From IMG/VR virus record IMGVR_UViG_3300033997_000243, positions 124,001-188,000 of that record: DNA of 64,000 nt; one strand, 5' to 3'. Within the stretch, counting starts at the first letter, position 1. Each line of letters opens with the position of its first letter. A model generated the notes under the pieces. The model was not told the DNA's origin. It was given only the letters and a program-made list of their open reading frames with translations, and did not search any database. Shown here piece after piece: positions 23,397 to 58,702 of this stretch. A program made the position numbers and the translations under genes.

Positions 23397-23479
23397 GTGC
23401 CTATTATAGCAAAAATAGTATGTACCTACAATAGCTGTTTTTGACACACCTCGATCAGTTCAGTTACTTTCAACAGTTT
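23397..23479 (-). promoter_or_regulatory. sigma70-type promoter/hairpin/operator element P1
   Basis: TTGTAG-17-TATAAT with extended TG; upstream TGATCGAGGTGTGTCAAAAA conserved in four copies at identical spacing. Confidence 0.8.
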
Positions 23480-23971
23480 TTAATGTAATCGGGTTATCAC
23501 ATACCAACTTGTTGGCCCTAAATTTTTATAAGAGCAGCCCTTCTCCAAATAGTCTATTGAGTACAGATCTAATTCAGTCAAAGCTAAGATTTCCTGAAGT
23601 CCCTTGAGTGAACGAACCCAACGCTGTTGATCACTATTAACCAGTTCAAAGCTACGTACATCTTCAGCCGTATTATTTTTCTCAAGTGGATTATTTGAAA
23701 TAGTAATACTGACATGACCTTCAAGTTCACTGTGACCGATCTCAACTTTCGTCCAACCAGCATCAATAAACTTTTCAGTCAAATATTCTTTGTGTTGAAA
23801 CATGGCTACACTCAATGGAGTGGCGGCCATTAGATCTAAACTTAACAAATCTGACTGGCGCTCACGCTGAACCCAATTGTCTGTCACTACTTCAATAAGT
23901 TTATTGTTTAACAACTCTAAAGTTTTATCAGGTGACAGCATTACAAGATCTTTTGGTGTAATTAATTTCAT
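23480..23971 (-). CDS. hypothetical protein (shared Y/F-x3-GW domain family)
   Basis: FIDAGWTKVEI...GHVSITI; start moved to MKLITPK. Confidence 0.8.
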   Translation of the reverse strand: MKLITPKDLVMLSPDKTLELLNNKLIEVVTDNWVQRERQSDLLSLDLMAATPLSVAMFQHKEYLTEKFIDAGWTKVEIGHSELEGHVSITISNNPLEKNNTAEDVRSFELVNSDQQRWVRSLKGLQEILALTELDLYSIDYLEKGCSYKNLGPTSWYVITRLH

Positions 23972-23982
23972 TGGTTTCTCAC

Positions 23983-24621
23983 TTAAATTGAATCGTAGTC
24001 TAAGGCTGGTGCGCCTTCCCAATACAAGCGAACGGTTTTCCAGCTATCAAACTTTCTGTGATTGATCTTTGTTCCAAACTGATCAGCTATTCTTTGCTGT
24101 TCAATCTGAAAGTAAAGTGCTGTATGTTGGCCGTGAAGCCATTGACCTGCCGATGGAGGATTCGTCCCATGATAAAAACTTCTGGTGGCTCTTTTTCCAG
24201 AAACCGGATCGATATAGGTAACAACATGGTAATATTCTGTTCTGCCGTTACGTGAATTAGTTTTGGTACAAAAACGAATGTTGTTGAAGCCGCCACCTTT
24301 TACAGTTGGAACATAAGGAATATCTACCAATAATTGTTTGTAATATTGAATAGCGTGATCTACAGTTGCTTGTATTCCGCCATGTTTAGCATAATTAAAA
24401 TGCGTTCCATATCGAACACCTTCACGCACTAAACGAACTTGCAAATAACCTTTGTCTGGAAAGGAAAGCCCATGACCATTTGTTGACAAAAGTTTAATAG
24501 TTTCTTTTGAAAGTGCCTTCGTTACGTAGTTTGGTAAATTAGTGCAACCACGAGCAAACTTTGATTTTTCTTTTTCTTGCATCATTCTATCCATAAAAGA
24601 AAGGCGGGTAAGTCCCGCCAT
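23983..24621 (-). CDS. putative AP2-like DNA-binding protein
   Basis: YLQVRLVREGVRYGTHFNYAKHGG..A..HAIQY plus a second unit NIRF...YHVVTY...GKRATRSFY. Confidence 0.55.
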   Translation of the reverse strand: MAGLTRLSFMDRMMQEKEKSKFARGCTNLPNYVTKALSKETIKLLSTNGHGLSFPDKGYLQVRLVREGVRYGTHFNYAKHGGIQATVDHAIQYYKQLLVDIPYVPTVKGGGFNNIRFCTKTNSRNGRTEYYHVVTYIDPVSGKRATRSFYHGTNPPSAGQWLHGQHTALYFQIEQQRIADQFGTKINHRKFDSWKTVRLYWEGAPALDYDSI

Positions 24622-24629
24622 TTATTGCC

Positions 24630-24836
24630 TTACTTTTTATCAGTCTCTTCTGATAAAACTGACTTATTACAGTCAATAATAAGTTTGAGTTTACCGGAAG
24701 ATTCAGGCCGCTTTTTCGCAATAACAACAGAAAGTTGATCTGTCGGTAAAGGCTCAGTGCGCTGAATAAAAAAAGCGGTATCGGCTGCGTTCTTCAAGAA
24801 CTCAATTGTTTTCTTTTGGTGTGGAAAAAGATCCAT
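24630..24836 (-). CDS. small hypothetical protein starting with an SF2-helicase Q-motif-like segment
   Basis: MDLFPHQKKTIEFL; AAGGA RBS. Confidence 0.65.
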   Translation of the reverse strand: MDLFPHQKKTIEFLKNAADTAFFIQRTEPLPTDQLSVVIAKKRPESSGKLKLIIDCNKSVLSEETDKK

Positions 24837-24846
24837 AAATTTATCC

Positions 24847-25293
24847 TTAATCCAGAACAGTGATAACGCCAAAGCTATCACCGACTTTAATAACATGGCC
24901 TTCCATCAGATCGCCAACTTTTCTGAATTGACCGTCAGCAAGTTCAACAATACTATCAGAAGTAAGTTCGACAACTGATCCAGCTTTATTTACAATCGAA
25001 CTAAAGCTAACGCCACCAATGTCCACGCCCATTGTATAGTCATAACACTTGATAAGCTCTGCATCATCTGGATGTGAACTGACTCCAAGTGTTGAACTTT
25101 TACCACTGCAAACAATAGACGAGCCAAAGAAACTTATTTCACCAGCCGAAAAAATTTCGCAATCTTCATCAAAAGATTCGCGGATCATCTGCTTTAGAAT
25201 TTTAAACATTTCGGCGTGAACAAATTGATTCGGCATAATCAAAGGAACTTTACGAGAAAGTTCACCTTTAGTAACAGCAACTACGTATTTCAT
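24847..25293 (-). CDS. hypothetical protein with C-terminal Hint/intein-like fragment
   Basis: GSVVELTSDSIVELADGQFRKVGDLMEGHVI. Confidence 0.75.
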   Translation of the reverse strand: MKYVVAVTKGELSRKVPLIMPNQFVHAEMFKILKQMIRESFDEDCEIFSAGEISFFGSSIVCSGKSSTLGVSSHPDDAELIKCYDYTMGVDIGGVSFSSIVNKAGSVVELTSDSIVELADGQFRKVGDLMEGHVIKVGDSFGVITVLD

Positions 25294-25303
25294 AGTAAAT
25301 TCC

Positions 25304-25900
25304 TTATGTTACTGGCTTAATAAGTTTATCAATCTTATCGATCCAGATTGCACGTTTGCCCTCGGCCAGTGCTTTACGCATTGTTTCGCGGCCATCTTCT
25401 GTAAGCTCTCTACGGTAAAATTCATTGGCCTTAGAAAAGATTGTTGAATTGCCGCAAAGATGAAGCCCGTTATCAGATTTCAACAACGTCTGTAAATCTT
25501 CAGGTTCTATTGCCAATACGTAACCATCAGGACGACTGCCCCAATTTAATTCGTATTCTGTAACACTGGCTACCCAAATAAAAACCAATGATACTTCGGT
25601 TTTTAAAGACACTTTGTTAAAGGCAGCAACTTTTTGGCCATATGTTAAGCAACCAATGCTTTCGATGCCTGTTGCACACAAACGCACAACTTTAATGGCA
25701 TCGATCATTTGTTCGGCATACTCAGTTTTGTCGGGTCTGCGAATTGTTGCATCGTATGCACCTATAAAACTTAGGTAGGCAACACGCTCGACTTCTTTAA
25801 TGGTATTGCCTAATCGATCTTCTTTTGTAGCATTAAATAAAAAACTTAATGCACTTTCAACGCTGTTGGCGTCAAATAAATCTTTGATTTCTACTTTCAT
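25304..25900 (-). CDS. hypothetical phage protein
   Basis: EYELNWGSRPDG motif; AAGGAG RBS. Confidence 0.85.
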   Translation of the reverse strand: MKVEIKDLFDANSVESALSFLFNATKEDRLGNTIKEVERVAYLSFIGAYDATIRRPDKTEYAEQMIDAIKVVRLCATGIESIGCLTYGQKVAAFNKVSLKTEVSLVFIWVASVTEYELNWGSRPDGYVLAIEPEDLQTLLKSDNGLHLCGNSTIFSKANEFYRRELTEDGRETMRKALAEGKRAIWIDKIDKLIKPVT

Positions 25901-25910
25901 AGTGTACTCC

Positions 25911-26744
25911 TTAAACGACCAATGAACGCAAGTGCATATAAAAGGCTTTTGTTTCGCCGTCCAGATCAGTTATTTTAACGTCTGTTGTGGCCCGTTGAAG
26001 TTCAAACTTTATCTTACTTCCAATAAAGTAATCATGCACTGCCCAACTTTTAAGCGTAGAGTCTGTTGGAGTAAAATCGAAAACAAGTTCGACTGCATCT
26101 GTTCCGTGTTCTTCAAAGACACGAGCAATTTCATGTTGGTGTGTTGTGACTGCTAAACGACCACACAATGAAGTTTCATTGTCGCTAAACTTTTTGGCTG
26201 ACTTCAAAGTACCCAAAGAAATACTACGCTCTATATACCAGATAAACTTTTTCAGTGTATCATTCGTACCGCATTGATACGCAACGTGGACACAGCAATT
26301 ACGTAACACAGGATCAAGATCTACTGAATTAAGTTTGACACAAAACTTATCTATTAAAGCTTGTGCTTCTTCATACTCAGCTTTGAACAGTGCTTCACCA
26401 AGTTTGTTTTCTAACACAGCAGACGCACGATCCACAGTAATGATTGCCAACATTTTATCCAAAGCTGCATTGACAACGCCGTCAGTCAACAACTTTTTAA
26501 TATAGCTTTCATTGCCTAAGTTATCGCCTTCTTCACACGTAAGTAAATTTGTGCGTTTAATTTGAAAGGCAAGAGTATCACGCATTACACCAAATAAATG
26601 GGTTTTGGCTGATCCATCTAAATCAGCTTTACCTAGAACGCGGTGAATCATTTTTCCGTTGTACGCATCTTCTTTGATCATCGTACTGGCTTTTGCAAAG
26701 ATTACAGAAATATCTAACTGATGGTTTGGTGTTGATAGTAACAT
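25911..26744 (-). CDS. hypothetical protein (paralog of 49285..50088)
   Basis: AAGGAGG RBS; shared C-terminal half. Confidence 0.85.
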   Translation of the reverse strand: MLLSTPNHQLDISVIFAKASTMIKEDAYNGKMIHRVLGKADLDGSAKTHLFGVMRDTLAFQIKRTNLLTCEEGDNLGNESYIKKLLTDGVVNAALDKMLAIITVDRASAVLENKLGEALFKAEYEEAQALIDKFCVKLNSVDLDPVLRNCCVHVAYQCGTNDTLKKFIWYIERSISLGTLKSAKKFSDNETSLCGRLAVTTHQHEIARVFEEHGTDAVELVFDFTPTDSTLKSWAVHDYFIGSKIKFELQRATTDVKITDLDGETKAFYMHLRSLVV

Positions 26745-26772
26745 AGCGGTTCCTCCTTTGGAACGGGTTGCT

Positions 26773-26826
26773 TTTAACTAGAGTAGTTAATTTTGGACAC
26801 TCAAAAGAATGCCCAATCAAAATACA
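26773..26826 (-). repeat. conserved post-stop hairpin, copy 3
   Basis: UUGGGCA-UUCUUUUGAG-UGUCCAA (G-U pair), 10 nt after the UAG, then a TTAACTA/TAGTTAA palindrome. Confidence 0.5.
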
Positions 26827-27021
26827 CTAAGGTTGAACTTTTAGAAAGCCGTACTTTTCAATAGCGGCAATTCGTTCGGGTGTAAAATCGCCAGAAACTT
26901 TCTTCAAGCTTGGTGGATTTGTACTCAAGACTTCGGCAACTTCTACACTACTGCCGTCATTGAAGTCGTATCGCCACACAGCACCTTGTAAGTGCGTATC
27001 TTCGATTACCATTAATTGCAT
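26827..27021 (-). CDS. hypothetical protein
   Basis: AAGGGG RBS. Confidence 0.8.
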   Translation of the reverse strand: MQLMVIEDTHLQGAVWRYDFNDGSSVEVAEVLSTNPPSLKKVSGDFTPERIAAIEKYGFLKVQP

Positions 27022-27039
27022 TTATTTCCCCTTATCAAT

Positions 27040-27261
27040 TTAATTAGGTTTGGTTTGATAAACCCAATGTTTAATAGAAATGATGAACTTTTTAATGCTC
27101 TTACTTTCCCAGTACCATTCATGTAGAGCAACAAAAAGTTGTCCGAGTTTACCCAACACTGTAAACGCGAATAAAAATATACCTAATAGTGCAAAAGGAA
27201 ACAGCATTGCAAAATAACGCATTACAAATTTACATTTCCAGACAAAACTTTTTTCTTTCAT
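27040..27261 (-). CDS. small membrane protein
   Basis: One or two TM segments; GGAG RBS. Confidence 0.8.
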   Translation of the reverse strand: MKEKSFVWKCKFVMRYFAMLFPFALLGIFLFAFTVLGKLGQLFVALHEWYWESKSIKKFIISIKHWVYQTKPN

Positions 27262-27297
27262 AGCGGTTACTCCGGTAACAGGTTGAAAAGATTAAGA

Positions 27298-27663
27298 CTA
27301 ATCACGTTCTTCATAGTATTGTTTGCGTGGAAAAGCTTTTGGTGTTATCCAGTAACCATCTTCGCAAACATCCCAGTCGGTATAGATCGTTGTTCTTACA
27401 TCACAAAGACTAACAAACTTTTCTTTGTGTTCTGGAACAAGGTTAAACAGCGGAATCCATTCGCTCGTTGTTCTCAAGTAAACGAATTCAAGTTCTGCCC
27501 AACCTTCGACCTTCAGTAAATCTTCTTTGAGAAAGTGTGAAGTCTGCAAAGGAACTTGAGTACCTTTCATGTTTACGCGCAAAAATGGACTGTCATCTAG
27601 TTCAAGATCGTTTACGATTTGAGCCAGTGTATATCTTTTGCCAGTGATTGGAAATTGTTTCAT
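27298..27663 (-). CDS. hypothetical protein
   Basis: GAGGA RBS. Confidence 0.8.
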   Translation of the reverse strand: MKQFPITGKRYTLAQIVNDLELDDSPFLRVNMKGTQVPLQTSHFLKEDLLKVEGWAELEFVYLRTTSEWIPLFNLVPEHKEKFVSLCDVRTTIYTDWDVCEDGYWITPKAFPRKQYYEERD

Positions 27664-27670
27664 ATTATCC

Positions 27671-28012
27671 TCACTTTAAAATTGAATTAATAGCAGCATC
27701 CATTTCTTTTTGCGCTGCCAATAAATTTTTAGTCTGATCTATCTGAAGCCACAAATAGCCGACCAACAGTTTTACCAACTTTTCTATGTTTTCATTGACA
27801 GCCTTGGATTTTCCCTTGCTGCCACAATGATTAGTTAAGTACGAGCGAACAACCGATCTTGCAGAACTAAAAATAAGATCTTGCGAAAGTTCGTCAATAG
27901 TTGACGCCTTTGTCAATAACGCAACCGCTTTTAAATCAGTGCATAACGCATTGTACATAAAGCTGATAGCGTCTGAATATTCAAACTTTTCTTCTTTAAC
28001 TAAAGATACCAT
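27671..28012 (-). CDS. hypothetical protein
   Basis: Start moved to MVSLVKEE (AAGGA); the ORF-track start lies inside promoter P2. Confidence 0.75.
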   Translation of the reverse strand: MVSLVKEEKFEYSDAISFMYNALCTDLKAVALLTKASTIDELSQDLIFSSARSVVRSYLTNHCGSKGKSKAVNENIEKLVKLLVGYLWLQIDQTKNLLAAQKEMDAAINSILK

Positions 28013-28043
28013 AATTGCTTTCCTTGTTTGCTCTAACTTGTAG

Positions 28044-28100
28044 CCATTATAGCAAAAACTGCTTGTCCCATCAATGGGTATTTTTGACACACTTGGATCA
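28044..28100 (-). promoter_or_regulatory. sigma70-type promoter/hairpin/operator element P2
   Basis: TTGATG-17-TATAAT with extended TG; TGATCCAAGTGTGTCAAAAA upstream. Confidence 0.8.
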
Positions 28101-28520
28101 ATTGGCGCTGTTTAACCAGTTATACACAATAAACTTTTCATCCAACTTTCTAAAGAACTTTTCAGTTCCTTGAGTTCCGACCGTACCAAACAGCTTATGC
28201 TTTTGTTTTGGCCTTGGTAAATATTCAAACATTTTTCTAGCGATACCAAGACCTCTAAATTTGCCACGCATAAAGAAATGATGATATAGACTGTAAATTG
28301 ATCTATTCTTTGACCTAAAGGTTTCTCTGTATAGTATTCCAACTGGTATATCATCAATAAAGGCCAAAACTATTTCTTTCTTTATGTCTTTCGGTTGTTC
28401 TTCATTTACTATGTTCCGCAGATTTTTAATTAGCTGCCAACCATTAACATACAATCTATGCTTAATAGCTAGTTCCGCGCCTTTAACCAGATTTTCGTTT
28501 TCAAAGATTTTTAATTCCAT
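28098..28520 (-). CDS. GNAT family N-acetyltransferase
   Basis: VLAFIDDIPVG ... FFMRGKFRGLGIARKMF (motif A) ... EKFFRKL. Confidence 0.7.
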   Translation of the reverse strand: MELKIFENENLVKGAELAIKHRLYVNGWQLIKNLRNIVNEEQPKDIKKEIVLAFIDDIPVGILYRETFRSKNRSIYSLYHHFFMRGKFRGLGIARKMFEYLPRPKQKHKLFGTVGTQGTEKFFRKLDEKFIVYNWLNSAN

Positions 28521-28534
28521 GATTTTTCCAAACG

Positions 28535-28557
28535 AAAAAGGCAGCCGAAGCTGCCTT
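28535..28557 (-). terminator. Rho-independent terminator (UUCG loop)
   Basis: AAGGCAGC-TTCG-GCTGCCTTTTT after the dCMP deaminase stop. Confidence 0.9.
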
Positions 28558-28561
28558 ATAA

Positions 28562-29536
28562 TCAACAAATTTTAAGTGAAGGCTCTTTTGTATCTACAGC
28601 CACGAATAATTGAAAAACACTATTGAAACCAACAACCATTACTATGCCATTGGCTAAACGCATTTTAAACACAACATCCAATACAGCTGGTGGATCTTCA
28701 CCAATGCTTTTGTTATTTATTTCAAAAGCAGCATCTTTCATAGTTCCGTAAGTTTTTGCACGTTCCTTTAAAAGTTCGGCCACACTGATCATTCCGTAGC
28801 GCAAACTACGATAACGACTTGCGCCATAATAAGCTGGATTCATTTCATCACAAAATTCACCAAAATCTTCTTCTGGCTTGTACAAGGTTGCACCTCGAAC
28901 AAACAAGTTAAGTTCATTCAAGTCCTTTTTGTCCAACATGGCCACATGAGCTGCTGTAATAAAATTTTGAATGCGTAACAGAAAGTTTTGTTGGAATCTG
29001 CTAACCATAAGTTCAAACTTTATTTGATCTTGAGTTTCCAACAATTCGCTTATACGCATGGCACTCACTTGTTCCCAAGTAATTCCAGCTTCATCAAGTA
29101 ACTCTAAACCTGCTTGCACTCTGTAACTGTCAACAAAAATAACGTGGTCAATTTTACCAGTTTTGATGATCGCTTGTGAGCAGTTAATACAAGGCGTACT
29201 CATGACCAACATTACACAACGGCCAAACTTTTCAACAGATTTGTTGCGATGTGATCTGTGTGGTATGTTTGAGAAGTTTGCTTTTTTAATAGCATTTATT
29301 TCACTGTGAATAACTTCAGGCAGTGTAATTCCATCAACTTCAAACACATGATCTGATCCGCTGGCAACTCCATTGCAGCCATCACTTAAAATCTGCCAAA
29401 CTTGACCAGTAGTATGCTGAAGAATAATACTACCCATTTTCTTTCGCGTAACCTTGCTACGCTGTGCCGCAACAAACATATCCAGCACATAAGTTTTCAG
29501 CGTTGGAAATTGTTGTAGATATGAAAGTTTAGTCAC
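28562..29536 (-). CDS. dCMP deaminase with additional C-terminal domain
   Basis: RSK..RKKMGSII, GCNG, HSEINAI and PCINC zinc/catalytic motifs, YR..AGLELL.EAGI. Confidence 0.88.
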   Translation of the reverse strand: MTKLSYLQQFPTLKTYVLDMFVAAQRSKVTRKKMGSIILQHTTGQVWQILSDGCNGVASGSDHVFEVDGITLPEVIHSEINAIKKANFSNIPHRSHRNKSVEKFGRCVMLVMSTPCINCSQAIIKTGKIDHVIFVDSYRVQAGLELLDEAGITWEQVSAMRISELLETQDQIKFELMVSRFQQNFLLRIQNFITAAHVAMLDKKDLNELNLFVRGATLYKPEEDFGEFCDEMNPAYYGASRYRSLRYGMISVAELLKERAKTYGTMKDAAFEINNKSIGEDPPAVLDVVFKMRLANGIVMVVGFNSVFQLFVAVDTKEPSLKIC

Positions 29537-30078
29537 ACTGATTCTCCAATGACAACATCAAGTTTAATACGTTCCGGTGTCGGTAGCGGATCGTACATGA
29601 AATCAATTGAGATCAAACAATCGCCATCTTTCGTCATATTGGCTCGATTTGCATCAGTCCAAGTTAAAGAACTTTGCATATCAAATGTGTAAAGAATTAT
29701 ATCTCTGATTTGAGATCTACGTGAAGCAATTCTTCTGGTATCTACTGGAACACTAACGAAGGTTACGCGATTCCAATCTATTTGACCTACTTTACGCTCA
29801 ACATAAAGCTTAAGCTGCTTAAGAGCGTTATCTCGTGTCGTGGGAAAATAATTAATAAGCAAATAAATTCTTTTCCCTGTACGAAACGAGTCCAAGTGTA
29901 GCTTGTTAAGGACAACCATAGTTGGACAATCGAAGGCTATGGCTGAATGTGTACTCATATCAACTATGGGAAATTCATCGAAAGTTGTCAGTGGAGGATA
30001 AACCAGATTTTGTACATCCCAAAACCGCAATTTACTTTTGCTGGACTCTAAATGAAAAAGATTAATATCTGAACTCAT
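29533..30078 (-). CDS. hypothetical protein
   Basis: AAGGA RBS. Confidence 0.8.
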   Translation of the reverse strand: MSSDINLFHLESSKSKLRFWDVQNLVYPPLTTFDEFPIVDMSTHSAIAFDCPTMVVLNKLHLDSFRTGKRIYLLINYFPTTRDNALKQLKLYVERKVGQIDWNRVTFVSVPVDTRRIASRRSQIRDIILYTFDMQSSLTWTDANRANMTKDGDCLISIDFMYDPLPTPERIKLDVVIGESV

Positions 30079-30087
30079 TGTAATTCC

Positions 30088-40195: not shown

Positions 40196-40206
40196 TGATT
40201 TACAGT
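40196..40206 (-). promoter_or_regulatory. ACTGTAAATCA intergenic motif, copy 3
   Basis: Exact 11-mer immediately after the stop. Confidence 0.55.
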
Positions 40207-51557: not shown

Positions 51558-51560
51558 AAA

Positions 51561-52406
51561 CTATTTAACCTCGAACACGTACAGTATAATGCAATGAGTT
51601 ACCACTGATAAAACAATGGCTACTAAATTCAACATCCGAGCTTTCAATAATTTTCGGCCCCATTCAGCAATTTTATCTGTTAGCAAAGTGCCTGAACTTG
51701 CCGAAAAACTTTGATAAGTTTCAGTTAACCAGAGTTTTATTCTGCGTTGATGAAGTTTTTCATGTATAAGGGTCGAGGCCACAAAAAATATGTTTAGTGA
51801 GAGCGTTAAGTAGATTGCCCAACTTTGTACTGTATAACCTAAATCCATCAAATTAGATCTGGCGTACACATAAACACATACCATAGTTAATATTGAAAGA
51901 TTACCAATAGCGTTCGCAAGTAAAACACGAGAAAGTGTCAACCAATTTTGATCGTTGTTCAACAATTCTTCTTTCAAACTTTTTGCGGTATCTGAAGAAT
52001 CACCTACGTTTTCAGAAGTCAAGTCAGCAGCTGTAACCGAATAGTTTGCTGAAATATTATGATTCTTTGTCACAGTCCACTTAGGTAGAAAGTTTTGGAA
52101 GTCGAATTTAATTCTGAAAAGATCAGCCGGACATCCTTTAAATTCGTAATGAACTGTGCTTCCACTTGCACCCGTAAAATTGCTGAATTTAAAGCAACCT
52201 AAAAACGTAAGCCAGAAAACTTTGTAGCCATGCTTTTTTAAATAGTCTTTCTTCAAACACACGTTACGCAACAGCACGAAAAACATTGTGCAGGATATTT
52301 TTAGGTAGTCCCACAGCCCCCACAGTAAAATGAATGCAACGAAGGCTACACACAACCAACCAAAGACCTGAACAAGTCCATCAACTAAAGCTAAAATGGT
52401 TTCCAT
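51561..52406 (-). CDS. multi-pass membrane protein
   Basis: Several TMs; AGAGGA RBS. Confidence 0.85.
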   Translation of the reverse strand: METILALVDGLVQVFGWLCVAFVAFILLWGLWDYLKISCTMFFVLLRNVCLKKDYLKKHGYKVFWLTFLGCFKFSNFTGASGSTVHYEFKGCPADLFRIKFDFQNFLPKWTVTKNHNISANYSVTAADLTSENVGDSSDTAKSLKEELLNNDQNWLTLSRVLLANAIGNLSILTMVCVYVYARSNLMDLGYTVQSWAIYLTLSLNIFFVASTLIHEKLHQRRIKLWLTETYQSFSASSGTLLTDKIAEWGRKLLKARMLNLVAIVLSVVTHCIILYVFEVK

Positions 52407-52427
52407 AATACTATCCTCTAAAAAGAT

Positions 52428-53060
52428 TTATTTAAGGTTTGCCGCGAACGTCAAACTATGCCGCTGGATTGCCTCAAGTGGCGTTGCTGCGTATGGCCCA
52501 ACATCAATACGTTCGTCAGTGTGAAGCATTGTTATTGTATGCCAGTAGCGATGATCTTCTTTCATTGGATCAGCATTCACCACCAGTTCTGCAATAAAAT
52601 CTTTGCAATACGCAACAGCAGAAATTTCAGAATCAGTTGCCTTTATTTTATATTGGGGGTATTGCAATACAAATTCAGCAAGCAACTCATCTGACTTTAA
52701 ATTTGCGACATCAAACTGCAAAGTTGGAAAAAGTTGTTTAAGAATTACATTACTTAGCTGAGATTTTCCTGCGTCAGACGTACCAGCAATGACCAACATT
52801 TCACCTCTACGCAAACCGCCGTTTACTACAACCTCACCACCGTACCATTCACCGAGCTTTTGGGCCAATGATTGCGGAGGAATACTTATGTCTGTTAAAG
52901 AAAGTCCATCGTTTTGTGGTGCAGGAATTGGCTCACCAATTTTTTCAAACATTTCCCGTGCTTGAGCCAAAGTAAGTTCATGCGTTGGCATATGAACAGC
53001 AGATTCAATATGTTTTGGCAAAGCAGTTCTTTTCACTTGTTTTTTAAGATGCGGTTTCAT
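52428..53060 (-). CDS. hypothetical protein with orphan DnaB/RecA-type Walker A segment
   Basis: GGLRRGEMLVIAGTSDAGKSQL; AGGAG RBS. Confidence 0.8.
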   Translation of the reverse strand: MKPHLKKQVKRTALPKHIESAVHMPTHELTLAQAREMFEKIGEPIPAPQNDGLSLTDISIPPQSLAQKLGEWYGGEVVVNGGLRRGEMLVIAGTSDAGKSQLSNVILKQLFPTLQFDVANLKSDELLAEFVLQYPQYKIKATDSEISAVAYCKDFIAELVVNADPMKEDHRYWHTITMLHTDERIDVGPYAATPLEAIQRHSLTFAANLK

Positions 53061-53069
53061 AATATTCTC

Positions 53070-53495
53070 CTATATTAAAATTCGACGATGCGGGTAGTAA
53101 CTCATTAAAATATTACCAGACCCGATTAAACCACTTACCGCAGATTTGATTTCGTACTTATCCCACAAACTTTTTGCAAACGCATCAACAATGAATATAG
53201 GTAAATGGTCTAACACAACATAATCATATTTACCTTGGTAAAATTCAGAGATCACATATTTGGCCGCATAGTTTAAGGCTGAACGTGCGTAAGGGCAATG
53301 ATCTTTTCCAGCGGCTGCCTCGAAAAGATCTTGAGTTAATATCTCTGGATTAACGGTCAAAACAAAACTTTCATTCATTGCCTTTCTGTTGGCTTCGCTT
53401 AAAAGTCCAGCACGATGTCCAGACTTTTCTATTGAGTAATGTGTATCACCAAACTCAGAAAGAAACAAAAAGTTTAACGTATTTATTAATTGCAT
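53070..53495 (-). CDS. hypothetical protein (paralog of 58186..58587)
   Basis: YDYVVLDHLPIFIV vs PDYVLVDGIPLFFV. Confidence 0.8.
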   Translation of the reverse strand: MQLINTLNFLFLSEFGDTHYSIEKSGHRAGLLSEANRKAMNESFVLTVNPEILTQDLFEAAAGKDHCPYARSALNYAAKYVISEFYQGKYDYVVLDHLPIFIVDAFAKSLWDKYEIKSAVSGLIGSGNILMSYYPHRRILI

Positions 53496-53556
53496 AATAT
53501 TCTCCTTTAAGAATTTTTGATTGCGTACACTAAAGTAATGTACGCTACAAACAAAC

Positions 53557-53985
53557 TTATTCGGTTTGAGAAGAAAGTTTCACCATTACAAAAGGAACTC
53601 CGCCGGGTAAACTGGAATTTCTTTCCCGTGGCGTTAAAGTCAGTAACTCAAGTGCAACGCCAAGACATACAAGTTGATCAACAATTCTTTGTTGGCCAGT
53701 CCAGAGCGCACCACTTTTATCAGCACACATATTCAGAAAAGTTTCACCTTCAGTTCTTCTGAAAGAATCATCCAGTTGATTTAACATATCAACAACAGAT
53801 TCTTTGTGGCCGCGACAACGCTCTGGATGAAAGCCAACTTTTGTGACAACACCTGAACCTAAAAGATAAGTGCCTTCTTCAAGAATTGGCCCTTTGTCAG
53901 CAACTTCCTCTCCACGAAAAAGAGAATCAAGAAAAATTGCTGTCACGTTTTCTGACGTAAGTTTCATTACATTTTGTTTGGTCAT
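53557..53985 (-). CDS. conserved hypothetical phage protein
   Basis: FHPER...MLNQL...F...TFLNMC.D..G..WTG pattern; GGAG RBS. Confidence 0.85.
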   Translation of the reverse strand: MTKQNVMKLTSENVTAIFLDSLFRGEEVADKGPILEEGTYLLGSGVVTKVGFHPERCRGHKESVVDMLNQLDDSFRRTEGETFLNMCADKSGALWTGQQRIVDQLVCLGVALELLTLTPRERNSSLPGGVPFVMVKLSSQTE

Positions 53986-53997
53986 ACATTTCTCCAA

Positions 53998-54309
53998 TTA
54001 ATCTTTTTTCCAATTACCATCAACGTAAGTGTAAGTACCTTCACCAACTTTGCAGTAAAAATCTAAGGCAGATATGGCTCCTTGGCCGTAACCTGCTTTG
54101 TTGCAAGCATCTGCAATAGTTGCACCCCTTACAACCTCTTTTTTACCACCAATAAAGTAAAGAGTGAATTCGTGAACGTCTGGCGTATTAGTCAGCACAA
54201 CAGCACGATCAATAACTTCCTGATCCACAACCAGAGTCACAGTTCCGTTAGCTTTATTAACGGTAAAAGTTGACGCCAGTATTTGCTTTAAAATTTCTTT
54301 TGCTTCCAT
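53998..54309 (-). CDS. conserved hypothetical phage protein
   Basis: FTLYF..GKKEVV.G.TIADA...AGYG.GA..ALDFY. Confidence 0.85.
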   Translation of the reverse strand: MEAKEILKQILASTFTVNKANGTVTLVVDQEVIDRAVVLTNTPDVHEFTLYFIGGKKEVVRGATIADACNKAGYGQGAISALDFYCKVGEGTYTYVDGNWKKD

Positions 54310-54342
54310 TTTGTTATCCTCTTTTTGTCAAGTACAATTGTT

Positions 54343-54382
54343 TTCATTGAGTACACTGAATGCAATGTACTCTAGTAAACAA
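54343..54382 (-). repeat. conserved post-stop hairpin, copy 4
   Basis: GAGUACA-UUGCAUUCAG-UGUACUC, 10 nt after the UAG; compensatory changes relative to copy 1. Confidence 0.6.
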
Positions 54383-54727
54383 CTATGCCAGCGGGTCATA
54401 GCCAAGGACGCCAACTCGTGCATCACGAACTTTTTCATCAGATCCATCTGCATAACGATCTGGTGATTCATCAGAAGTAAAATAATCGTAAAGCTTTTCA
54501 GCATCAACGATTGATCTCAGACCGAAAGAAAGATTTTCATCCTGACTTTCCAGCCAAGCGGTAATATCACTCATTCTTTCCGCAATGTTTACACGTTGTT
54601 TTGGTGACTGAGCAGCCCGAACTTTTTTCGCATCTGTTCCAGTCACATTGTCGATTGCATCCAAAGCAGATTGTTGAATTGCTTTGGCTTCTTCTTTCGT
54701 TGGTTTGCGAACTTTTTTATCGGACAT
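54383..54727 (-). CDS. hypothetical protein
   Basis: AAGGAG RBS. Confidence 0.85.
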   Translation of the reverse strand: MSDKKVRKPTKEEAKAIQQSALDAIDNVTGTDAKKVRAAQSPKQRVNIAERMSDITAWLESQDENLSFGLRSIVDAEKLYDYFTSDESPDRYADGSDEKVRDARVGVLGYDPLA

Positions 54728-54750
54728 ACATTGCTCTCCTTTAATAAAAA

Positions 54751-55314
54751 CTACTTTAAAAGTTTAATACGCTGATCTAAAAATGTTTGTAACACACCTT
54801 CGTCAGCCAATTCACAATAATCGTCATCGTACTCTGTTGGATTTAACGCTGAGATTAAAAGATCGTCAGTAAACTCCACTTTGAAAATATCCTGTTTATA
54901 AACAGCTGGAATTTCGCAACCTAGTATGTAAGACACACAGGTAACAACATTATGTCTTACGTACATAATCTGGAAGGAAAGAAGTTCTGAACATTCGTAA
55001 ATTGAACAGAGTTCTTTGTAAACTTTCAATCCAAAATTCAAAATGAAATCTGGCTGCCCAACAAAGTTCGGCATAGGTCTGTATATTCTTTTTACGTTCA
55101 ATGAAGCACTGGATTTTGAATCTTTAAGAAAACATTCGATTACAACTGGCAAAGTATCTACTTTGTTTTCTTTAAGCTTGCTGTTCCAGTCCTCTATAAA
55201 AAAGTCGGAATCTACAAATCTAGCTGCCGCATGTAAGTGACCGCTTTGATCATCCATGTCATCGATTTTAATAGTGAAAAGTTTGCGATTTATTGAGTTA
55301 GCTGAATTATTCAT
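54751..55314 (-). CDS. hypothetical protein
   Basis: Start moved to MNNSANS (AAGGT); first gene after promoter P3. Confidence 0.8.
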   Translation of the reverse strand: MNNSANSINRKLFTIKIDDMDDQSGHLHAAARFVDSDFFIEDWNSKLKENKVDTLPVVIECFLKDSKSSASLNVKRIYRPMPNFVGQPDFILNFGLKVYKELCSIYECSELLSFQIMYVRHNVVTCVSYILGCEIPAVYKQDIFKVEFTDDLLISALNPTEYDDDYCELADEGVLQTFLDQRIKLLK

Positions 55315-55358
55315 TTGTCTTACCTTACTTAGATTTAAAGCACTATTGCTTTGTTTCA

Positions 55359-55445
55359 ATGTGCCTATTATAGCAAAATAGGGGCTGATCAACAACCCCT
55401 ATTTTTGACACGCCTCGATCAGTTCAGCTACTTTCAACGATTTTT
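55359..55445 (-). promoter_or_regulatory. sigma70-type promoter/terminator/operator element P3
   Basis: TTGTTG-17-TATAAT with extended TG; AAATAGGGG...CCCCTATTT hairpin; TGATCGAGGCGTGTCAAAAA; near-identical flanks to P1. Confidence 0.85.
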
Positions 55446-55446
55446 G

Positions 55447-57666
55447 TTAGTTTCCCTTAACCGGCAAATGTTCTCCAATACGCGCTATCCATAATACACC
55501 GTCAATGATTTTGAAGTGAACTTGAATAGTAGCATCTTCACTGCGACGAGTACCAAGCGTTAAATGCTGGATAAAAGTTTGCGGCTTTCCTTCAACATTA
55601 AATACACGCATTGCACTCAATACTTTGTTAGTCATTACAACTTCGCTTTCGTTGGCTTTGTATTTGTTGCCAAGAATATCCATCGCTTCTGAATCAGGAA
55701 TACCTGAAGTGATTGCTTGAAAGTAAGGCCCACACAAACGAACCAACATTTTTAAAAGTTTACGTGGATGGCGATACGTATTGCTTTCCAGATTCGACAT
55801 ATCCAGAAAGCGAGTGGCCGGAAACATTTCTTTGATGATTGTAACTACATCACACAAAGTTGGTTCATCCGTTAACGCATTTAATGTTGCATCCGTATAT
55901 TTGGCAACAACAATACTTTCTTGCGTTTCGTGTTTCTTGCTAAGCTTGTTTTTGAGATCCGCTATTTCAAGCAACAGATCTTTATTCTCAAGAAGTACCA
56001 ATTGAAGTTCATCAGTTTTTTCCGTAGAAACTTCTTTTGGATCTTCTGATTTCAAAACATACTTTTCAGCAATCAACACGTATTCGTTGGCGCTAACAAC
56101 CAAAGTATCTATCCATGATTCTACTCGCATTACAGACAAAGCAAGTGAATCCGAACAATCCACCATTTCCACAATAATATCTTGCTTGTGTGCAACGTCT
56201 TTAGCGGCGGCCAGAGTAGCAGTCAATTCGCTAAGACGTTTATCAGACTCAAGTGCTTTGCTGAAGTGCTCCAAGAAAAGTCGTTCAGATTGTGCGTCAG
56301 ACTTTCCTAAAGATTCATCTGTAACCCGAAGTTCGATAGGGCCACGAATTTCAGTTAACAACTCTTCACCGCGAGAAGGATCAAGTTGCAGACTTTCTAC
56401 GTATTCGATCTGAAGTTTGATGTTCGCATGTTTTGCCTTCAGGTTTTCCATTGTCTGAGTTAAAAGGTTATTTACTTCTCCACTCTTTTCAATGTCGGCC
56501 AAGTGTGAATATGCACTTGACAGATTTTCGGTTATGGCCTTGAAGTCACTTATCAAAGTTTTCTTGGCCGTTTCATCCAGACCAAAGTAAGACCGCAAAT
56601 CAACTTTATCCAGAAGCGCAAACTTTTTCTTGGCTTCCAAAAGTCTATCAAGTTGTTCATCAATTTCTTCATCAATAAACTTCAGGCCGCAATCGGCAGC
56701 AACTTCAAAAAGAACTCTGTCAACTTCACCAAAGTCAAAACCTTTGGTTCTGGCTTCCAGCATTTCTTTTGAGTTACCCAACTTTCCAATTACAGTGCGT
56801 TCATCTAATTGAGGCCAATTACGAACGTAGAAAGCCCAAATAGAAAACGTACAGGTAAATGTTGAGCTAATAAATGCGAGGAAAAGTAAACACGCATTCA
56901 ACCTGTTTAACTCAGTATTTTCATCGTGAGTTTTACACTCTTCGATCAAATACTCAAAATAAAAGGCCGCAGCGTTAACCATTTGTTTGCATGTATTATA
57001 TTCGCGCAAAGGCAACATATTGAAAAGCGAATTAATAAAGCTGGAATTAGCTTTCAAAGTTTTTGCTTCAGCGTATTCAGGCAACTTAGGCCAGCCTAAA
57101 ATATTTATGGCTGCTCTCAACATTCTCATTGACCATGCGTAATTCCATTTATCCGCAGATCTTTTTAATGGAACGGCAAACTGCATAAAGAACAAACAAT
57201 CTTCTTTGGTCTGCAATTCAGATTGATTACGAGCATGTCTTGGATAGCCGCCAACTGTCATCATTTCGTCAATCAAACGAATCGGCGCTTTACTATCCGC
57301 AAGAACACCAAGTTCTTTCATCAGTTTAAAAAAGTTGATCTGTTTTGGATACTCACCAAAATAAAATCTTGGGAAAGCAGCGGTTGCCACAATCTTTGAC
57401 ATCAGTTCGTCATTTTCCTCAGACGTAACAACAAGATGTGCGTACTTATCCGTGTTATGTTCGTAAGGAATTGAAAACAATGTAGGATCTTGAATACACT
57501 GTTTAAAGTTGCTGAGTAAAAGTTTGATTCGATTTTTGCGTACAGCCTCTTCAGGATCTTTTCCTGAAAACAAATCGATAACTTCTATAGAAACACCACT
57601 TTCTTGCAATGACTTAACATCTAAGCCTTTGCTGCGTAGAAGATCTAACGTAGCTTTAGAATCCAT
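55447..57666 (-). CDS. large coiled-coil protein with C-terminal RelE/ParE-like domain
   Basis: Ends RVFNVEG..QTFIQHLTLG....TIQVHFKI..GVLWIARIGEHLP; central heptad-rich region. Confidence 0.55.
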   Translation of the reverse strand: MDSKATLDLLRSKGLDVKSLQESGVSIEVIDLFSGKDPEEAVRKNRIKLLLSNFKQCIQDPTLFSIPYEHNTDKYAHLVVTSEENDELMSKIVATAAFPRFYFGEYPKQINFFKLMKELGVLADSKAPIRLIDEMMTVGGYPRHARNQSELQTKEDCLFFMQFAVPLKRSADKWNYAWSMRMLRAAINILGWPKLPEYAEAKTLKANSSFINSLFNMLPLREYNTCKQMVNAAAFYFEYLIEECKTHDENTELNRLNACLLFLAFISSTFTCTFSIWAFYVRNWPQLDERTVIGKLGNSKEMLEARTKGFDFGEVDRVLFEVAADCGLKFIDEEIDEQLDRLLEAKKKFALLDKVDLRSYFGLDETAKKTLISDFKAITENLSSAYSHLADIEKSGEVNNLLTQTMENLKAKHANIKLQIEYVESLQLDPSRGEELLTEIRGPIELRVTDESLGKSDAQSERLFLEHFSKALESDKRLSELTATLAAAKDVAHKQDIIVEMVDCSDSLALSVMRVESWIDTLVVSANEYVLIAEKYVLKSEDPKEVSTEKTDELQLVLLENKDLLLEIADLKNKLSKKHETQESIVVAKYTDATLNALTDEPTLCDVVTIIKEMFPATRFLDMSNLESNTYRHPRKLLKMLVRLCGPYFQAITSGIPDSEAMDILGNKYKANESEVVMTNKVLSAMRVFNVEGKPQTFIQHLTLGTRRSEDATIQVHFKIIDGVLWIARIGEHLPVKGN

Positions 57667-57675
57667 TTTCTTTCC

Positions 57676-58176
57676 CTAAAAAATTGTTGAAAGTAATTCG
57701 CGCATTGCACGATCTTGTTTGCGCTCTATTTTGTTTGAGCGTCTGGTAAGTGTGGCATGAATAACCAAACTTTCCATAGTCCCCTGAAAAACAGAACCAG
57801 TTCTTCTAACCTGAACAACTTTATTTTCAGCAAAGTTGTGTAGCTCAAGTTTAACTGTTTGACCGTGTTTCATAACACGACGAGCAATACCAGTAAGAAT
57901 ATCGAAAGTAAGATCATATTCTACGCCGTTACGCTCTTTGCACCACAGAAAAAGTTTGTCGTTGGAATAAAAGATTAGACCTTTACGGCTGGCTGTTTTT
58001 GAAAGATTGTACAGCTGCTCTAAAGTAAGATCAAAAATCATACTTGGAACCGTAACATCTGATCCAGCATCAAAGTTGATCTTAAGTTCACCGCTTTGTA
58101 TTTTGAAAACACAACCTTCCATAATTCGCACCAGACGTTTTTCGACTAAAGTGCGCGGTACTTTATTTTTCTTCAT
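57676..58176 (-). CDS. hypothetical protein (basic)
   Basis: AAGGAG RBS. Confidence 0.85.
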   Translation of the reverse strand: MKKNKVPRTLVEKRLVRIMEGCVFKIQSGELKINFDAGSDVTVPSMIFDLTLEQLYNLSKTASRKGLIFYSNDKLFLWCKERNGVEYDLTFDILTGIARRVMKHGQTVKLELHNFAENKVVQVRRTGSVFQGTMESLVIHATLTRRSNKIERKQDRAMRELLSTIF

Positions 58177-58185
58177 GGTATCTCC

Positions 58186-58587
58186 TTAAATGATACGTTT
58201 ATGATCCATATTCATTTGCACAATACAAATGTTTTTTGGCGGTAAAACAATAAGCGTTGCGCTATCCAAACTTATTGCATGTAATTGATCAACAATGTGT
58301 TGAACAAAAAATAAGGGAATGCCATCAACCAAAACATAGTCTGGAACATAACTAGCTTGATTCATAGCATCATCCATGATACAAGCAATCTTTTCAGCTT
58401 GCTTATAAAGCAGTGCTGATGATAACTTTGTATCATCTGATAAAAGGTTTACAACTTCATCAAATAAATCGTAAACTTTTTGCTGAGTAGATTCAGGCAA
58501 AACAAAAGTTACTATTGGAATATCATTCAATTGATCAAAATTCGATGGAACAAAAATACGCCTTGATAGCATAGCGAGTTTAATCAT
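58186..58587 (-). CDS. hypothetical protein (paralog of 53070..53495)
   Basis: Start moved to MIKLAML (GAGG); first gene after promoter P4. Confidence 0.8.
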   Translation of the reverse strand: MIKLAMLSRRIFVPSNFDQLNDIPIVTFVLPESTQQKVYDLFDEVVNLLSDDTKLSSALLYKQAEKIACIMDDAMNQASYVPDYVLVDGIPLFFVQHIVDQLHAISLDSATLIVLPPKNICIVQMNMDHKRII

Positions 58588-58640
58588 AAATACCTCAAAT
58601 TGAGTTAAAACAAGCAAGGTCGTTTCTTGATTTTCTTGGC

Positions 58641-58702
58641 CCTATTATAGCAAAAAGGGGCAGCCGAAGCCACCCCTATTTTTGACACACTTGGATCAGT
58701 TC
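58641..58702 (-). promoter_or_regulatory. sigma70-type promoter/terminator/operator element P4
   Basis: TGGCTT-17-TATAAT with extended TG; GGGGTGGC-TTCG-GCTGCCCC-TTTTT terminator in the spacer; TGATCCAAGTGTGTCAAAAA. Confidence 0.85.

What the first reader, a model, noticed from the sequence alone, without database searches (positions are those of the whole stretch)
23397..58702. Four-copy composite element: operator-like palindrome, hairpin over the -35, extended -10 promoter at invariant spacing
Seen at 23397-23479, 28044-28100, 55359-55445 and 58641-58702 on the minus strand: TGATC(C/G)A(A/G)G(T/C)GTGTC, then exactly 32 nt (starting AAAAA), then GCTATAAT. The spacer differs in sequence but always folds as a hairpin (a UUCG terminator in P4, AAATAGGGG/CCCCTATTT in P3), and TTGTAG/TTGATG/TTGTTG/TGGCTT sits exactly 17 nt before TATAAT inside it. 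In P2 and P4 the element starts at the upstream TGA stop. Inference: a stop-and-restart module whose TGA-N10-TCA dyad near -54 binds a phage regulator; it could also serve as a recombination anchor for shuffling gene cassettes.
Basis: partly seen in the sequence, partly recalled or inferred. Interest (0 to 1): 0.7.

Follow-up and report, generated by a model that had tools for sequence, protein, structure and literature searches.

The report
Phage promoter cassette, sometimes with terminator
The four repeats belong to a 13-copy family of strong bacterial-type promoters in an uncultured 320-kb phage, about half of which also carry a built-in transcription terminator; it is a new variant of the promoter-terminator cassettes (PeSLs) already known from T4-like phages.

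Summary
The sequences and the invariant spacing are exactly as reported. The family is larger, though: 13 copies in the 319.5-kb phage genome, all co-directional with the genes, with no intermediate-scoring sites. A relative with about 45% protein identity has 12-13 copies with the same geometry. The architecture is: conserved box AACTGATCnAnGTGTGTC (-64..-47), A5 (-46..-42), 22 free bases holding a TTGnnn -35, T4-5-G-n-TATAAT, then N5-CA as the start. "Always a hairpin" is wrong. P3 and P4 are strong terminator-like hairpins, whereas P1 and P2 fold no better than shuffles. Genome-wide, 6 of 13 copies have a hairpin, and hairpins are not kept at orthologous sites. The TGA-N10-TCA dyad is a 3-bp coincidence that TAA and TTT variants break; TGA/TAA there is often the upstream gene's stop codon. 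TGnTATAAT is depleted genome-wide, and 10 of the 13 occurrences lie in this family. The phage encodes sigma factors, and I found no RNA polymerase. My best reading is host sigma-70 (probably early) promoters with an optional embedded terminator, a variant of T4-type PeSLs. Cassette shuffling is seen at one copy only (P3). One further copy drives an AAA+ ATPase gene in a Rheinheimera defence island. No transcript data were available.

The parts
23396..23463 (-). P1. Box 23443-23460, A5 23438-23442, spacer 23416-23437 (-35 TTGTAG), T-tract/TG 23409-23415, TATAAT 23403-23408, predicted start A at 23396. No significant hairpin.
   Evidence: PWM 75.5; MFE -1.3, z +0.5; 21-nt leader, SD AAGGAG, 77-aa ORF
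28039..28106 (-). P2. Upstream ORF stop TGA at 28098-28100 inside the box, -35 TTGATG, TATAAT 28046-28051, predicted start 28039. Only a weak 4-bp stem, which is broken in the close relative.
   Evidence: PWM 74.6; MFE -4.3, z -0.6
55360..55427 (-). P3. TATAAT 55367-55372, predicted start 55360. Embedded terminator-like hairpin at 55376-55405 (AUAGGGG.../...CCCCUAU) enclosing the -35 TTGTTG.
   Evidence: PWM 79.6; MFE -18.0, z -5.7; stem kept and loop changed in G003
58637..58704 (-). P4. Upstream ORF stop TGA at 58696-58698 inside the box, TATAAT 58644-58649, predicted start 58637. UUCG-tetraloop terminator hairpin at 58656-58677 followed by T5.
   Evidence: PWM 86.6; called terminator-like; MFE -16.1, z -3.1
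23142..23375 (-). First gene downstream of P1 (77 aa, no annotation).
27671..28012 (-). First gene downstream of P2 (113 aa, no annotation). Relatives differ at its 3' end (about 590-nt insertion in G003; loose ends in X4 and X5).
54751..55314 (-). First gene downstream of P3 (187 aa). It is replaced by an unrelated, roughly 230-246-aa gene in G003 and in wastewater run X5. Homology ends at 55346.
58186..58587 (-). First gene downstream of P4 (133 aa, no annotation).

Best explanation
The element is a promoter class for the host's sigma-70 RNA polymerase, most likely the phage's early promoters, built on a rigid scaffold.

Shown by sequence:
- A near-consensus extended -10 (T4-5-G-n-TATAAT).
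- A partial -35 (TTGnnn) exactly 17 bp upstream.
- An A5 tract at -46..-42, where the proximal UP subsite (AAAAAARNR) for the alpha C-terminal domain lies.
- An invariant CA 6-7 nt after the -10, as the start.
- A Shine-Dalgarno sequence and start codon 20-65 nt downstream.
- An 18-bp asymmetric box at -64..-47 that is as conserved as the -10 across phages whose proteins are only about 45% identical.

Inferred:
- The box is a protein-contact site on one face of the DNA. It could serve an activator or enhancer in the class-I position, or a later shut-off factor.
- Its 5' part doubles as the stop codon (TGA/TAA) of the upstream gene.
- The 22-bp spacer is free to vary. In about half of the copies it is a GC-rich inverted repeat. 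Because it is flanked by the obligatory A5 and T5, it forms a canonical intrinsic terminator that should stop incoming transcription about 15 nt before the new start. Those copies would insulate transcription units; the others let upstream transcription read through.

The family lies in the two hypervariable, unannotated-gene-rich regions of the genome, like the PeSL cassettes of T4-type phages.
For: - Exact motif and spacing: 4 matches against 0.06 expected.
- 13 copies, all on the gene strand, with a clean score gap (24-87 against 2.4).
- G001 (286 kb, GC 34.6%) has 12-13 copies with identical geometry.
- Four copies sit at orthologous positions where the flanking proteins are 25-51% identical. 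There the box, A5, extended -10 and CA are kept and the spacers are unrelated.
- TATAAT occurs 164 times against 589 expected. TGnTATAAT occurs 13 times against 35 expected, and 10 of those 13 are in the family.
- The family supplies most of the strong intergenic sigma-70-like sites.
- SD and start codon lie 20-65 nt after the predicted start.
- The phage has two sigma-family genes and no beta/beta' hit. Its terminase is about 40% identical to the Y3/JA11/Yoloswag group. PMC7412058 describes PaBG of that group as encoding sigma factor genes; it names no polymerase subunit genes in the passages read.
- Sigma-1 lies in the operon below copy 298078.
- Hairpins: 6 of 13 copies at p<=0.02. P3 and P4 were confirmed by the tool, and P4 is called terminator-like. 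Copies 277362 and 286064 differ by a compensatory T-A to C-G change in the stem.
- 12 of 13 copies lie in the 37% of the genome with no DNA similarity to G001.
- Neighbouring genes have no Pfam hits.
- PeSL precedent: promoter and terminator activity were shown experimentally, with the stem-loop often between -35 and -10 (PMC2839356; PMC4122927).
Against: - There are no transcript 5' or 3' ends. The only public runs holding this phage are assembled contigs.
- The host is unknown, so 'sigma-70' rests on consensus alone.
- The -35 is weak in several copies (TGGCTT, TAGACG, TATACA).
- No binding partner for the box was found.
- Hairpins are absent in 7 of 13 copies and are not conserved at orthologous sites, so termination is not a defining function.
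- 'Early' timing is inferred, not shown.
- Divergent phiKZ-type polymerase subunits could escape the Pfam searches.
Confidence: 0.72

Rival explanations
1. The element is mainly a mobile regulatory cassette, as PeSLs are. Its roughly 70 bp of conserved sequence would serve as a homologous-recombination site that swaps, deletes or inserts gene cassettes, each bringing its own promoter and terminator. This is compatible with the promoter function; the question is whether shuffling is a significant role.
For: - The family lies in the hypervariable regions.
- Near-identical copies occur at distant loci: P4 and 298078 share the whole spacer, and P1, P3 and 299893 share extra flanks.
- The gene after P3 is replaced by an unrelated one in G003 and X5, with the junction 14 nt after the start.
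- There is a half element (box plus A5 only) at G000 196247-196266.
- A lone copy sits in a Rheinheimera island in front of an unrelated gene.
- Each genome has its own flavour of -35 and flank, which suggests homogenisation within a genome.
Against: - Only 1 of about 14 indel or replacement events between G000 and G002/G003 touches an element. About 0.1-0.9 is expected by chance.
- The 72-kb stretch holding 9 copies is fully collinear with G002.
- Most indels end at gene borders that have no element.
- The 'joints' seen in reads were paralogous copies cross-mapping.
Confidence: 0.25
2. The box would be a palindromic operator (TGA-N10-TCA at about -54) bound by a dimeric phage regulator such as the proteins at window 23983 or 5018.
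For: The box is strongly conserved and centred near -54, where class-I activators and the P2 Ogr / P4 Delta sites act (my own knowledge). The right arm TCA is invariant.
Against: - The arms are 3 bp long and the symmetry does not extend.
- The left arm is TAA or TTT in 4 of 13 G000 copies and in several G001 copies.
- The TGA/TAA alternation keeps a stop codon rather than a dyad.
- The candidate proteins have no Pfam DNA-binding hit and no homologue in G001.
Confidence: 0.08
3. The promoters are read by the phage's own sigma-1 (regions 2, 3 and 4) rather than by host sigma-70. That would make them middle promoters.
For: The phage encodes a 226-aa sigma with regions 2, 3 and 4. Region 3 could read the TG and region 4 a -35. 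No other motif with both a -35 and a -10 was found for it.
Against: - TG-n-TATAAT with TTG at 17 bp is the housekeeping-sigma consensus.
- The sigma-1 gene itself lies downstream of an element, with no other promoter-like site in between.
- A chromosomal copy in Rheinheimera would then be silent without the phage.
- A second motif, AAACTGTAAATC, is available for the phage sigmas.
Confidence: 0.12
4. The repeats are selfish or neutral (MITE- or REP-like) and have no regulatory role.
For: The element is multi-copy, short and intergenic, and some copies are near-identical.
Against: - The element always points the same way as the genes.
- It always sits 20-65 nt before an SD and start codon.
- The functional blocks are conserved while the spacer is free.
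- It is kept at orthologous sites across deep divergence.
- It has no terminal inverted repeats or target duplications.
Confidence: 0.03

Closest known systems
PeSLs (promoter-early stem-loops) of T4-type phages RB49/phi1, PST/T4 and nt-1/KVP40 (Arbiol et al. 2010, PMC2839356; Comeau et al. 2014, PMC4122927)
   Same: Both are repeated intergenic cassettes that combine a sigma-70-like early promoter with a stem-loop terminator. In RB49/phi1 the stem-loop often lies between -35 and -10. The nt-1 stem-loop consensus A3-4G3-loop-C3T3-4 resembles P3 and P4. Both are followed by an SD and start codon, cluster in hyperplastic regions of unannotated genes, and occur next to gene replacements.
   Different: This phage is not T4-like; its terminase is nearest the Y3/JA11/Yoloswag jumbo group. 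Upstream of the A-tract there is an almost invariant GC-containing 18-bp box rather than a merely AT-rich region. The spacing is rigid in 12 of 13 copies. The stem-loop is present in only about half the copies. Association with indels is at chance level in the genomes available. Promoter, terminator and mini-circle activities are untested here.
Extended -10 promoters with UP elements, such as T4 early promoters and rrnB P1 (proximal UP subsite AAAAAARNR at -46..-38; my own knowledge, Estrem et al. 1999)
   Same: TGnTATAAT, a weak or partial -35, and an A-tract exactly at -46..-42 (AAAAA[T/C]AG fits 8 of 9 positions).
   Different: The region where a distal UP subsite would lie (-57..-47) is not A/T-rich. 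It is a specific conserved sequence instead.
Class-I activator sites, e.g. P2 Ogr / P4 Delta TGT-N12-ACA at about -55 and CRP at -61.5 (my own knowledge)
   Same: A conserved upstream element is centred near -54/-55, on the same DNA face as the alpha C-terminal domain site.
   Different: There is no real dyad and the sequence is unrelated. No activator was identified, and the core promoter looks strong enough to work without one.
Plain UUCG-tetraloop intrinsic terminators of Erwinia Alexandravirus jumbo phages
   Same: They have the same hairpin sequence as P4 (GGGGTGGC-TTCG-GCTGCCCC with A and T flanks).
   Different: They have no box and no TATAAT after the T-tract, so they are terminators only.

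Membership tests
PeSL (T4-type promoter-early stem-loop cassette) | Sigma-70-like promoter: -35, 17-bp spacer, -10 | tested here: met
   TTGnnn (9 of 13), 17 bp, TATAAT (12 of 13; one TAAAAT), TG in 11 of 13
PeSL (T4-type promoter-early stem-loop cassette) | Stable stem-loop able to terminate, within or next to the promoter | tested here: inconclusive
   6 of 13 copies have one (MFE -10 to -18 kcal/mol, p<=0.02). The other 7, including P1 and P2, fold no better than shuffles.
PeSL (T4-type promoter-early stem-loop cassette) | [quoted passage not shown] | tested here: inconclusive
   A5 is present at -46..-42, but -64..-47 is a conserved box of mixed composition.
PeSL (T4-type promoter-early stem-loop cassette) | Preferential location in hyperplastic regions of unannotated genes, followed by an SD and start codon | tested here: met
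   12 of 13 copies lie in the 37% of the genome without DNA similarity to G001. The 30 flanking or downstream proteins scanned gave no Pfam match above a family's own cut-off. Leaders with SD.
PeSL (T4-type promoter-early stem-loop cassette) | Excess of indels or replacements at the elements between close relatives | tested here: not met
   Only 1 of about 14 events (at P3) lies within 30 nt of an element, which is about the chance level.
PeSL (T4-type promoter-early stem-loop cassette) | Mini-circle formation; promoter and terminator activity in vivo | not testable with these tools
   Only assembled contigs of public runs were available.
PeSL (T4-type promoter-early stem-loop cassette) | Carried by a T4-like myovirus | tested here: not met
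   The best terminase matches are Dickeya JA11/JA13, Erwinia Y3/Yoloswag and related jumbo phages, at about 40% identity.
Intrinsic (Rho-independent) terminator | GC-rich stem, short loop, and a T-tract directly after | tested here: met
   Met for P3, P4, 277362, 277480, 286064 and 298078 only.
Palindromic operator for a dimeric regulator | Dyad symmetry conserved in both arms | tested here: not met
   The arms are 3 bp only. The left arm varies (TGA, TAA, TTT) and the symmetry does not extend inward.
UP element (proximal subsite) | A-tract at -46..-38 that binds the alpha C-terminal domain | tested here: inconclusive
   Sequence and position fit (A5 invariant in all 13 G000 copies; broken in three G001 copies). 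Binding is not testable here.

The most novel reading that the evidence does not exclude
The invariant box would define an infection-specific promoter class, read with the help of a factor delivered or made first by this phage family, or of a host factor the phage exploits. A bacterial defence island would have captured the same promoter, so that an AAA+ ATPase defence gene is switched on by the phage's own early-transcription signal. That would be promoter mimicry used as an infection sensor. The evidence is a full-geometry copy (weight-matrix score 39.9) in front of an IetA-like AAA+ ATPase, in an integrase-bounded low-GC island of Rheinheimera texasensis. The island also carries type I R-M, WYL and Zorya-like genes, and nothing else in it resembles the phage.
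Probability: 0.1. Interest if true: 0.8.

Novelty: new variant of a known kind. Interest (0 to 1): 0.45.

Why it matters
It extends composite promoter-terminator cassettes, so far described only in T4-like phages, to an unrelated, uncultured jumbo-phage lineage. This suggests convergent or widespread use of such modules to wire large blocks of fast-evolving genes of unknown function.

The rigid scaffold makes it a clean natural system for dissecting upstream promoter determinants and the overlap of a terminator with a promoter. The scaffold is a fixed box, A5, a free 22-bp slot that can hold a terminator, and an extended -10.

The near-absence of TATAAT elsewhere in the genome shows selection against stray host-type promoters. 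The lone copy in a Rheinheimera defence island gives a first host lead for the phage. It also raises a testable idea about defence genes borrowing phage promoters.

Tried and rejected
- DNA and protein searches of the region against cultured phages found nothing.
- Pfam on 30 neighbouring or downstream proteins gave no match above a family's own cut-off, so no regulator could be named.
- Rfam on the window gave no family.
- Public runs: only Logan contigs from subsurface, soil, freshwater and wastewater samples, so no 5' or 3' ends. The apparent joint 23416->28079 and the loose ends at P1 and P4 are paralogous copies (299893, P3, 298078) cross-mapping.
- Matches in Erwinia Alexandravirus phages are plain terminators that share the P4 hairpin, not the element.
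- Box scans of IMG/VR, JGI metagenomes and GTDB genomes found only this clade (G001-G003) plus one Rheinheimera copy; the rest was at chance level. 300 further genomes of that bacterial family gave chance-level hits only.
- Dam regulation through the GATC in the box is unsupported. GATC is over-represented in the genome, not avoided.
- AAAAGTTTG as a promoter motif was rejected. It lies mostly inside genes, in all frames and both orientations.
- ECF-sigma, CRP, FNR, IHF, Fis and LexA consensus comparisons by eye gave no convincing fit.
- Synteny breakpoints show no excess at the elements.
- I did not run complex prediction or structure prediction, because no credible box-binding candidate emerged.
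Full report
WHAT IS THERE. Read on the minus strand, the four sites are exactly as described. The 20-mer TGATCSARGYGTGTCAAAAA occurs four times in the window against 0.06 expected. Each is followed at a fixed distance by TTTGCTATAAT. The window is bases 124001-188000 of a 319,518-bp IMG/VR phage record. The record has GC 37.6% and a 127-bp end repeat. All window genes are on the minus strand.

FAMILY SIZE. A weight matrix built from the copies finds exactly 13 members in the genome. All are on the minus strand inside minus-strand gene blocks (block map). They score 24-87 and the next best site scores 2.4. Four lie at 147-183 kb (the window) and nine at 266-300 kb. Pattern scans of IMG/VR found the same element only in three other records:
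- G002 and G003 are two contigs from one sample, 93-99% identical to this genome. They hold the orthologues of all 13 copies.
- G001 is 286.6 kb with GC 34.6%. It is similar only in patches of 64-82% DNA identity, and orthologous proteins are 25-51% identical. It has 12-13 copies, all on one strand, with identical geometry.
JGI metagenomes added nothing new.

ANATOMY. Positions are relative to the conserved A taken as +1. The consensus of 23 copies from G000 and G001 is given.
- AACTGATCnAnGTGTGTC at -64..-47.
- AAAAA at -46..-42, usually followed by (T/C)AG.
- A 22-nt variable spacer whose only conserved feature is TT(G) at -35..-33.
- TTTT(T)-G-n-TATAAT, with TATAAT at -12..-7.
- Five free bases, then CA.
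The CA is present in all 12 regularly spaced G000 copies. One copy (265810) has one extra base in the spacer. An SD and start codon follow 20-65 nt after the predicted start. In 12 of 24 copies the upstream ORF ends at the TGA or TAA at offsets 7-9 of the element. The TGATC/TAAAC alternation keeps that stop codon.

PROMOTER READING. TGnTATAAT with TTG 17 bp upstream is the housekeeping-sigma consensus. A5 sits where the proximal UP subsite lies (my own knowledge). TATAAT is strongly depleted in this genome, at 164 against 589 expected. TGnTATAAT occurs 13 times against 35 expected, and 10 of those are in the family. The family also makes up most of the strong, correctly oriented intergenic sigma-70-like sites.

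The phage has no detectable beta or beta' homologue. It does have two sigma-family genes. Sigma-1 is 226 aa with regions 2, 3 and 4. Sigma-2 is 339 aa with region 2 only. The terminase is about 40% identical to Dickeya JA11, Erwinia Y3/Yoloswag and related jumbo phages. PMC7412058 reports sigma factor genes in PaBG, a member of that group, and mentions no polymerase subunit genes in the passages I read. The sigma-1 gene lies downstream of copy 298078, with no copy of the second motif in between.

A second intergenic motif, AAACTGTAAATC, lies 13-63 nt before start codons on both strand blocks. It is conserved in G001 and is a natural candidate for the phage sigmas. I therefore read the element as the host-polymerase class, probably early. 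The timing is inferred, not shown.

HAIRPINS. Folding the A5-to-T5 segment gives P1 -1.3 kcal/mol (z +0.5), P2 -4.3 (z -0.6), P3 -18.0 (z -5.7) and P4 -16.1 (z -3.1). Across the genome, 6 of 13 copies have a significant hairpin. In G001 the figure is about 3-4 of 11 distinct spacer sequences. P4 is called terminator-like by the generic scan.

Where a hairpin is present it is under selection. Copies 277362 and 286064 differ by a compensatory T-A to C-G pair. P3 and its G003 orthologue keep the stem and change the loop. Hairpins are nevertheless gained and lost at orthologous sites. Copy 279410 has none while its G001 orthologue 96824 has a strong one. Copy 277362 has one while 95941 does not. 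P2's weak 4-bp stem is broken in its close relative.

The terminator is therefore an optional insert in the free spacer. It is easy to evolve because the obligatory A5 and T5 flanks are already complementary.

THE BOX. It is not a palindrome. The proposed arms are 3 bp, the left arm varies, and the symmetry does not extend. It consists of two conserved blocks about one helical turn apart: AACTnAnC, and GTGTGTCAAAAA. It is non-coding after the stop codon. It is conserved as strongly as the -10 while neighbouring proteins have diverged to about 45% identity. That argues for sequence-specific recognition by a protein, but I could not name one. The box is not a common bacterial motif: 9 hits in 596 Gb, roughly my estimate of the chance level.

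RECOMBINATION. Twelve of 13 copies lie in the two intervals (115-200 kb and 271-304 kb; 37% of the genome) that have essentially no DNA similarity to G001. Some copies at distant loci share their whole spacer or extra flanks. The gene after P3 is replaced by an unrelated gene in G003 and in a wastewater strain. Homology ends 14 nt after the predicted start and resumes at the next gene.

Of about 14 indel or replacement events between G000 and G002/G003, however, only this one touches an element. The 72 kb that hold nine copies are collinear. Shuffling at the element is thus documented once and is not enriched.

COMPARISON WITH WHAT IS KNOWN. The closest described system is the PeSL of T4-type phages. 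PeSLs are repeated early-promoter plus stem-loop cassettes in hyperplastic regions. Their promoter and terminator activity, and mini-circle formation, were shown experimentally. The stem-loop often lies between -35 and -10 (PMC2839356; PMC4122927).

The present element works like a PeSL on sequence grounds, but it differs in four ways:
- the phage lineage;
- the invariant non-AT box;
- the rigid spacing;
- the fact that the stem-loop is facultative.
I class it as a new variant of a known kind.

A COPY OUTSIDE THE PHAGES. One GTDB hit is a complete element (weight-matrix score 39.9) in Rheinheimera texasensis DSM 17496. It has the same 29-nt distance from A5 to TATAAT, plus TG and N5-CA, but no T-tract and no hairpin.
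- It lies between a divergent 668-aa double AAA+ ATPase, which it would drive, and an 894-aa UvrD-like helicase.
- Both genes sit in a roughly 29-kb low-GC island with an integrase gene at its GC boundary. The island also holds type I R-M, a WYL protein and a pair resembling Zorya ZorC/ZorD by domain content (my reading).
- Nothing else in those 40 kb resembles the phage.
- It is the only copy in that genome.
This is a host lead and shows that the promoter can move without its gene. Any sensing role is speculation.

LIMITS. There are no transcript ends, no known host and no binding protein. Every functional statement rests on sequence, conservation and analogy.

Noticed in passing
Rheinheimera texasensis NZ_JONU01000008.1 (L147/L172) minus strand 3260-3327; island about 1-29000: A full copy of the phage promoter element (weight-matrix score 39.9) sits in front of a 668-aa double AAA+ ATPase (IetA-like AAA domain), divergent from a UvrD/GajB-like helicase. 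Both lie in a low-GC island with an integrase gene at its GC boundary. The island also holds type I R-M, a WYL protein and an EH_Signature plus SNF2/Mrr pair that I read as Zorya ZorC/ZorD-like. There is no other similarity to the phage.
   Followed up: partly
window 8717-8724, 15246-15253, 40198-40205, 61738-61745 (minus); about 20 more across G000: A second intergenic motif, (A/T)AAACTGTAAATC, lies 13-63 nt upstream of start codons on both strand blocks, including the plus-strand blocks that carry tail-protein genes. It is conserved in G001. It is probably a -10-only promoter class for a phage sigma factor.
   Followed up: partly
whole genome G000 (e.g. window 1712, 5193, 8781, 8960 on the minus strand): The 9-mer AAAAGTTTG occurs 103 times (about 6.5 expected) in G000 and 43 times (6.8 expected) in G001. 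It is found in all reading frames and both orientations, with sharp edges. This is a DNA-level signal of unknown function.
   Followed up: partly
whole genome G000: TATAAT is depleted 3.6-fold (164 against 589 expected). TGnTATAAT occurs only three times outside the promoter family. CTAG is depleted 4-fold in G000 but not in G001.
   Followed up: yes
G000 277308-277413 minus (L069:17308-17413): Two elements lie in tandem 118 nt apart, and the tandem is also present in G001 (170 nt apart). In G000 the first start and the second copy's terminator bound a 106-nt non-coding RNA that folds well (MFE -27, z -3.65). This is a possible small RNA. The terminator is absent in G001.
   Followed up: partly
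leaders of G000 copies 298078, 286064, 278694 and 277362, and G001 95941: A conserved 5' leader, A(U/A)UGGU(U)A(G/A)GGCAA..., starts at +1. It is identical over 17 nt between orthologues in G000 and G001. It may be a 5' stem-loop or a regulatory leader.
   Followed up: no
G000 196247-196266 minus (outside the window): A half element: box plus A5 (19 of 20 matches) with no T-tract and no -10. It resembles the degraded 'half PeSLs' described in T4-like phages.
   Followed up: no
G000 294533-295213 (-) and about 309331-310350 (-): There are two phage sigma-family genes. Sigma-1 is 226 aa with regions 2, 3 and 4. Sigma-2 is 339 aa with region 2 only and has a CTGTAAAT motif just upstream. No beta or beta' homologue was detected.
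   Followed up: partly
G000 263982-264090 plus strand: One of the three TGnTATAAT sites outside the family is intergenic and points against the flanking genes. By eye, it is followed by inverted repeats and a T-tract. This is a possible small RNA gene.
   Followed up: no
G000 254314-257265 (-): The large terminase gene (983 aa) has an intein splicing-domain match at residues 204-450, just below Pfam's cut-off (32.3 against 35.8 bits).
   Followed up: no
G000 106241-107848 (-): A 535-aa ORF whose DNA, translated by eye, reads like a GroEL-type chaperonin. I did not check it with any tool.
   Followed up: no
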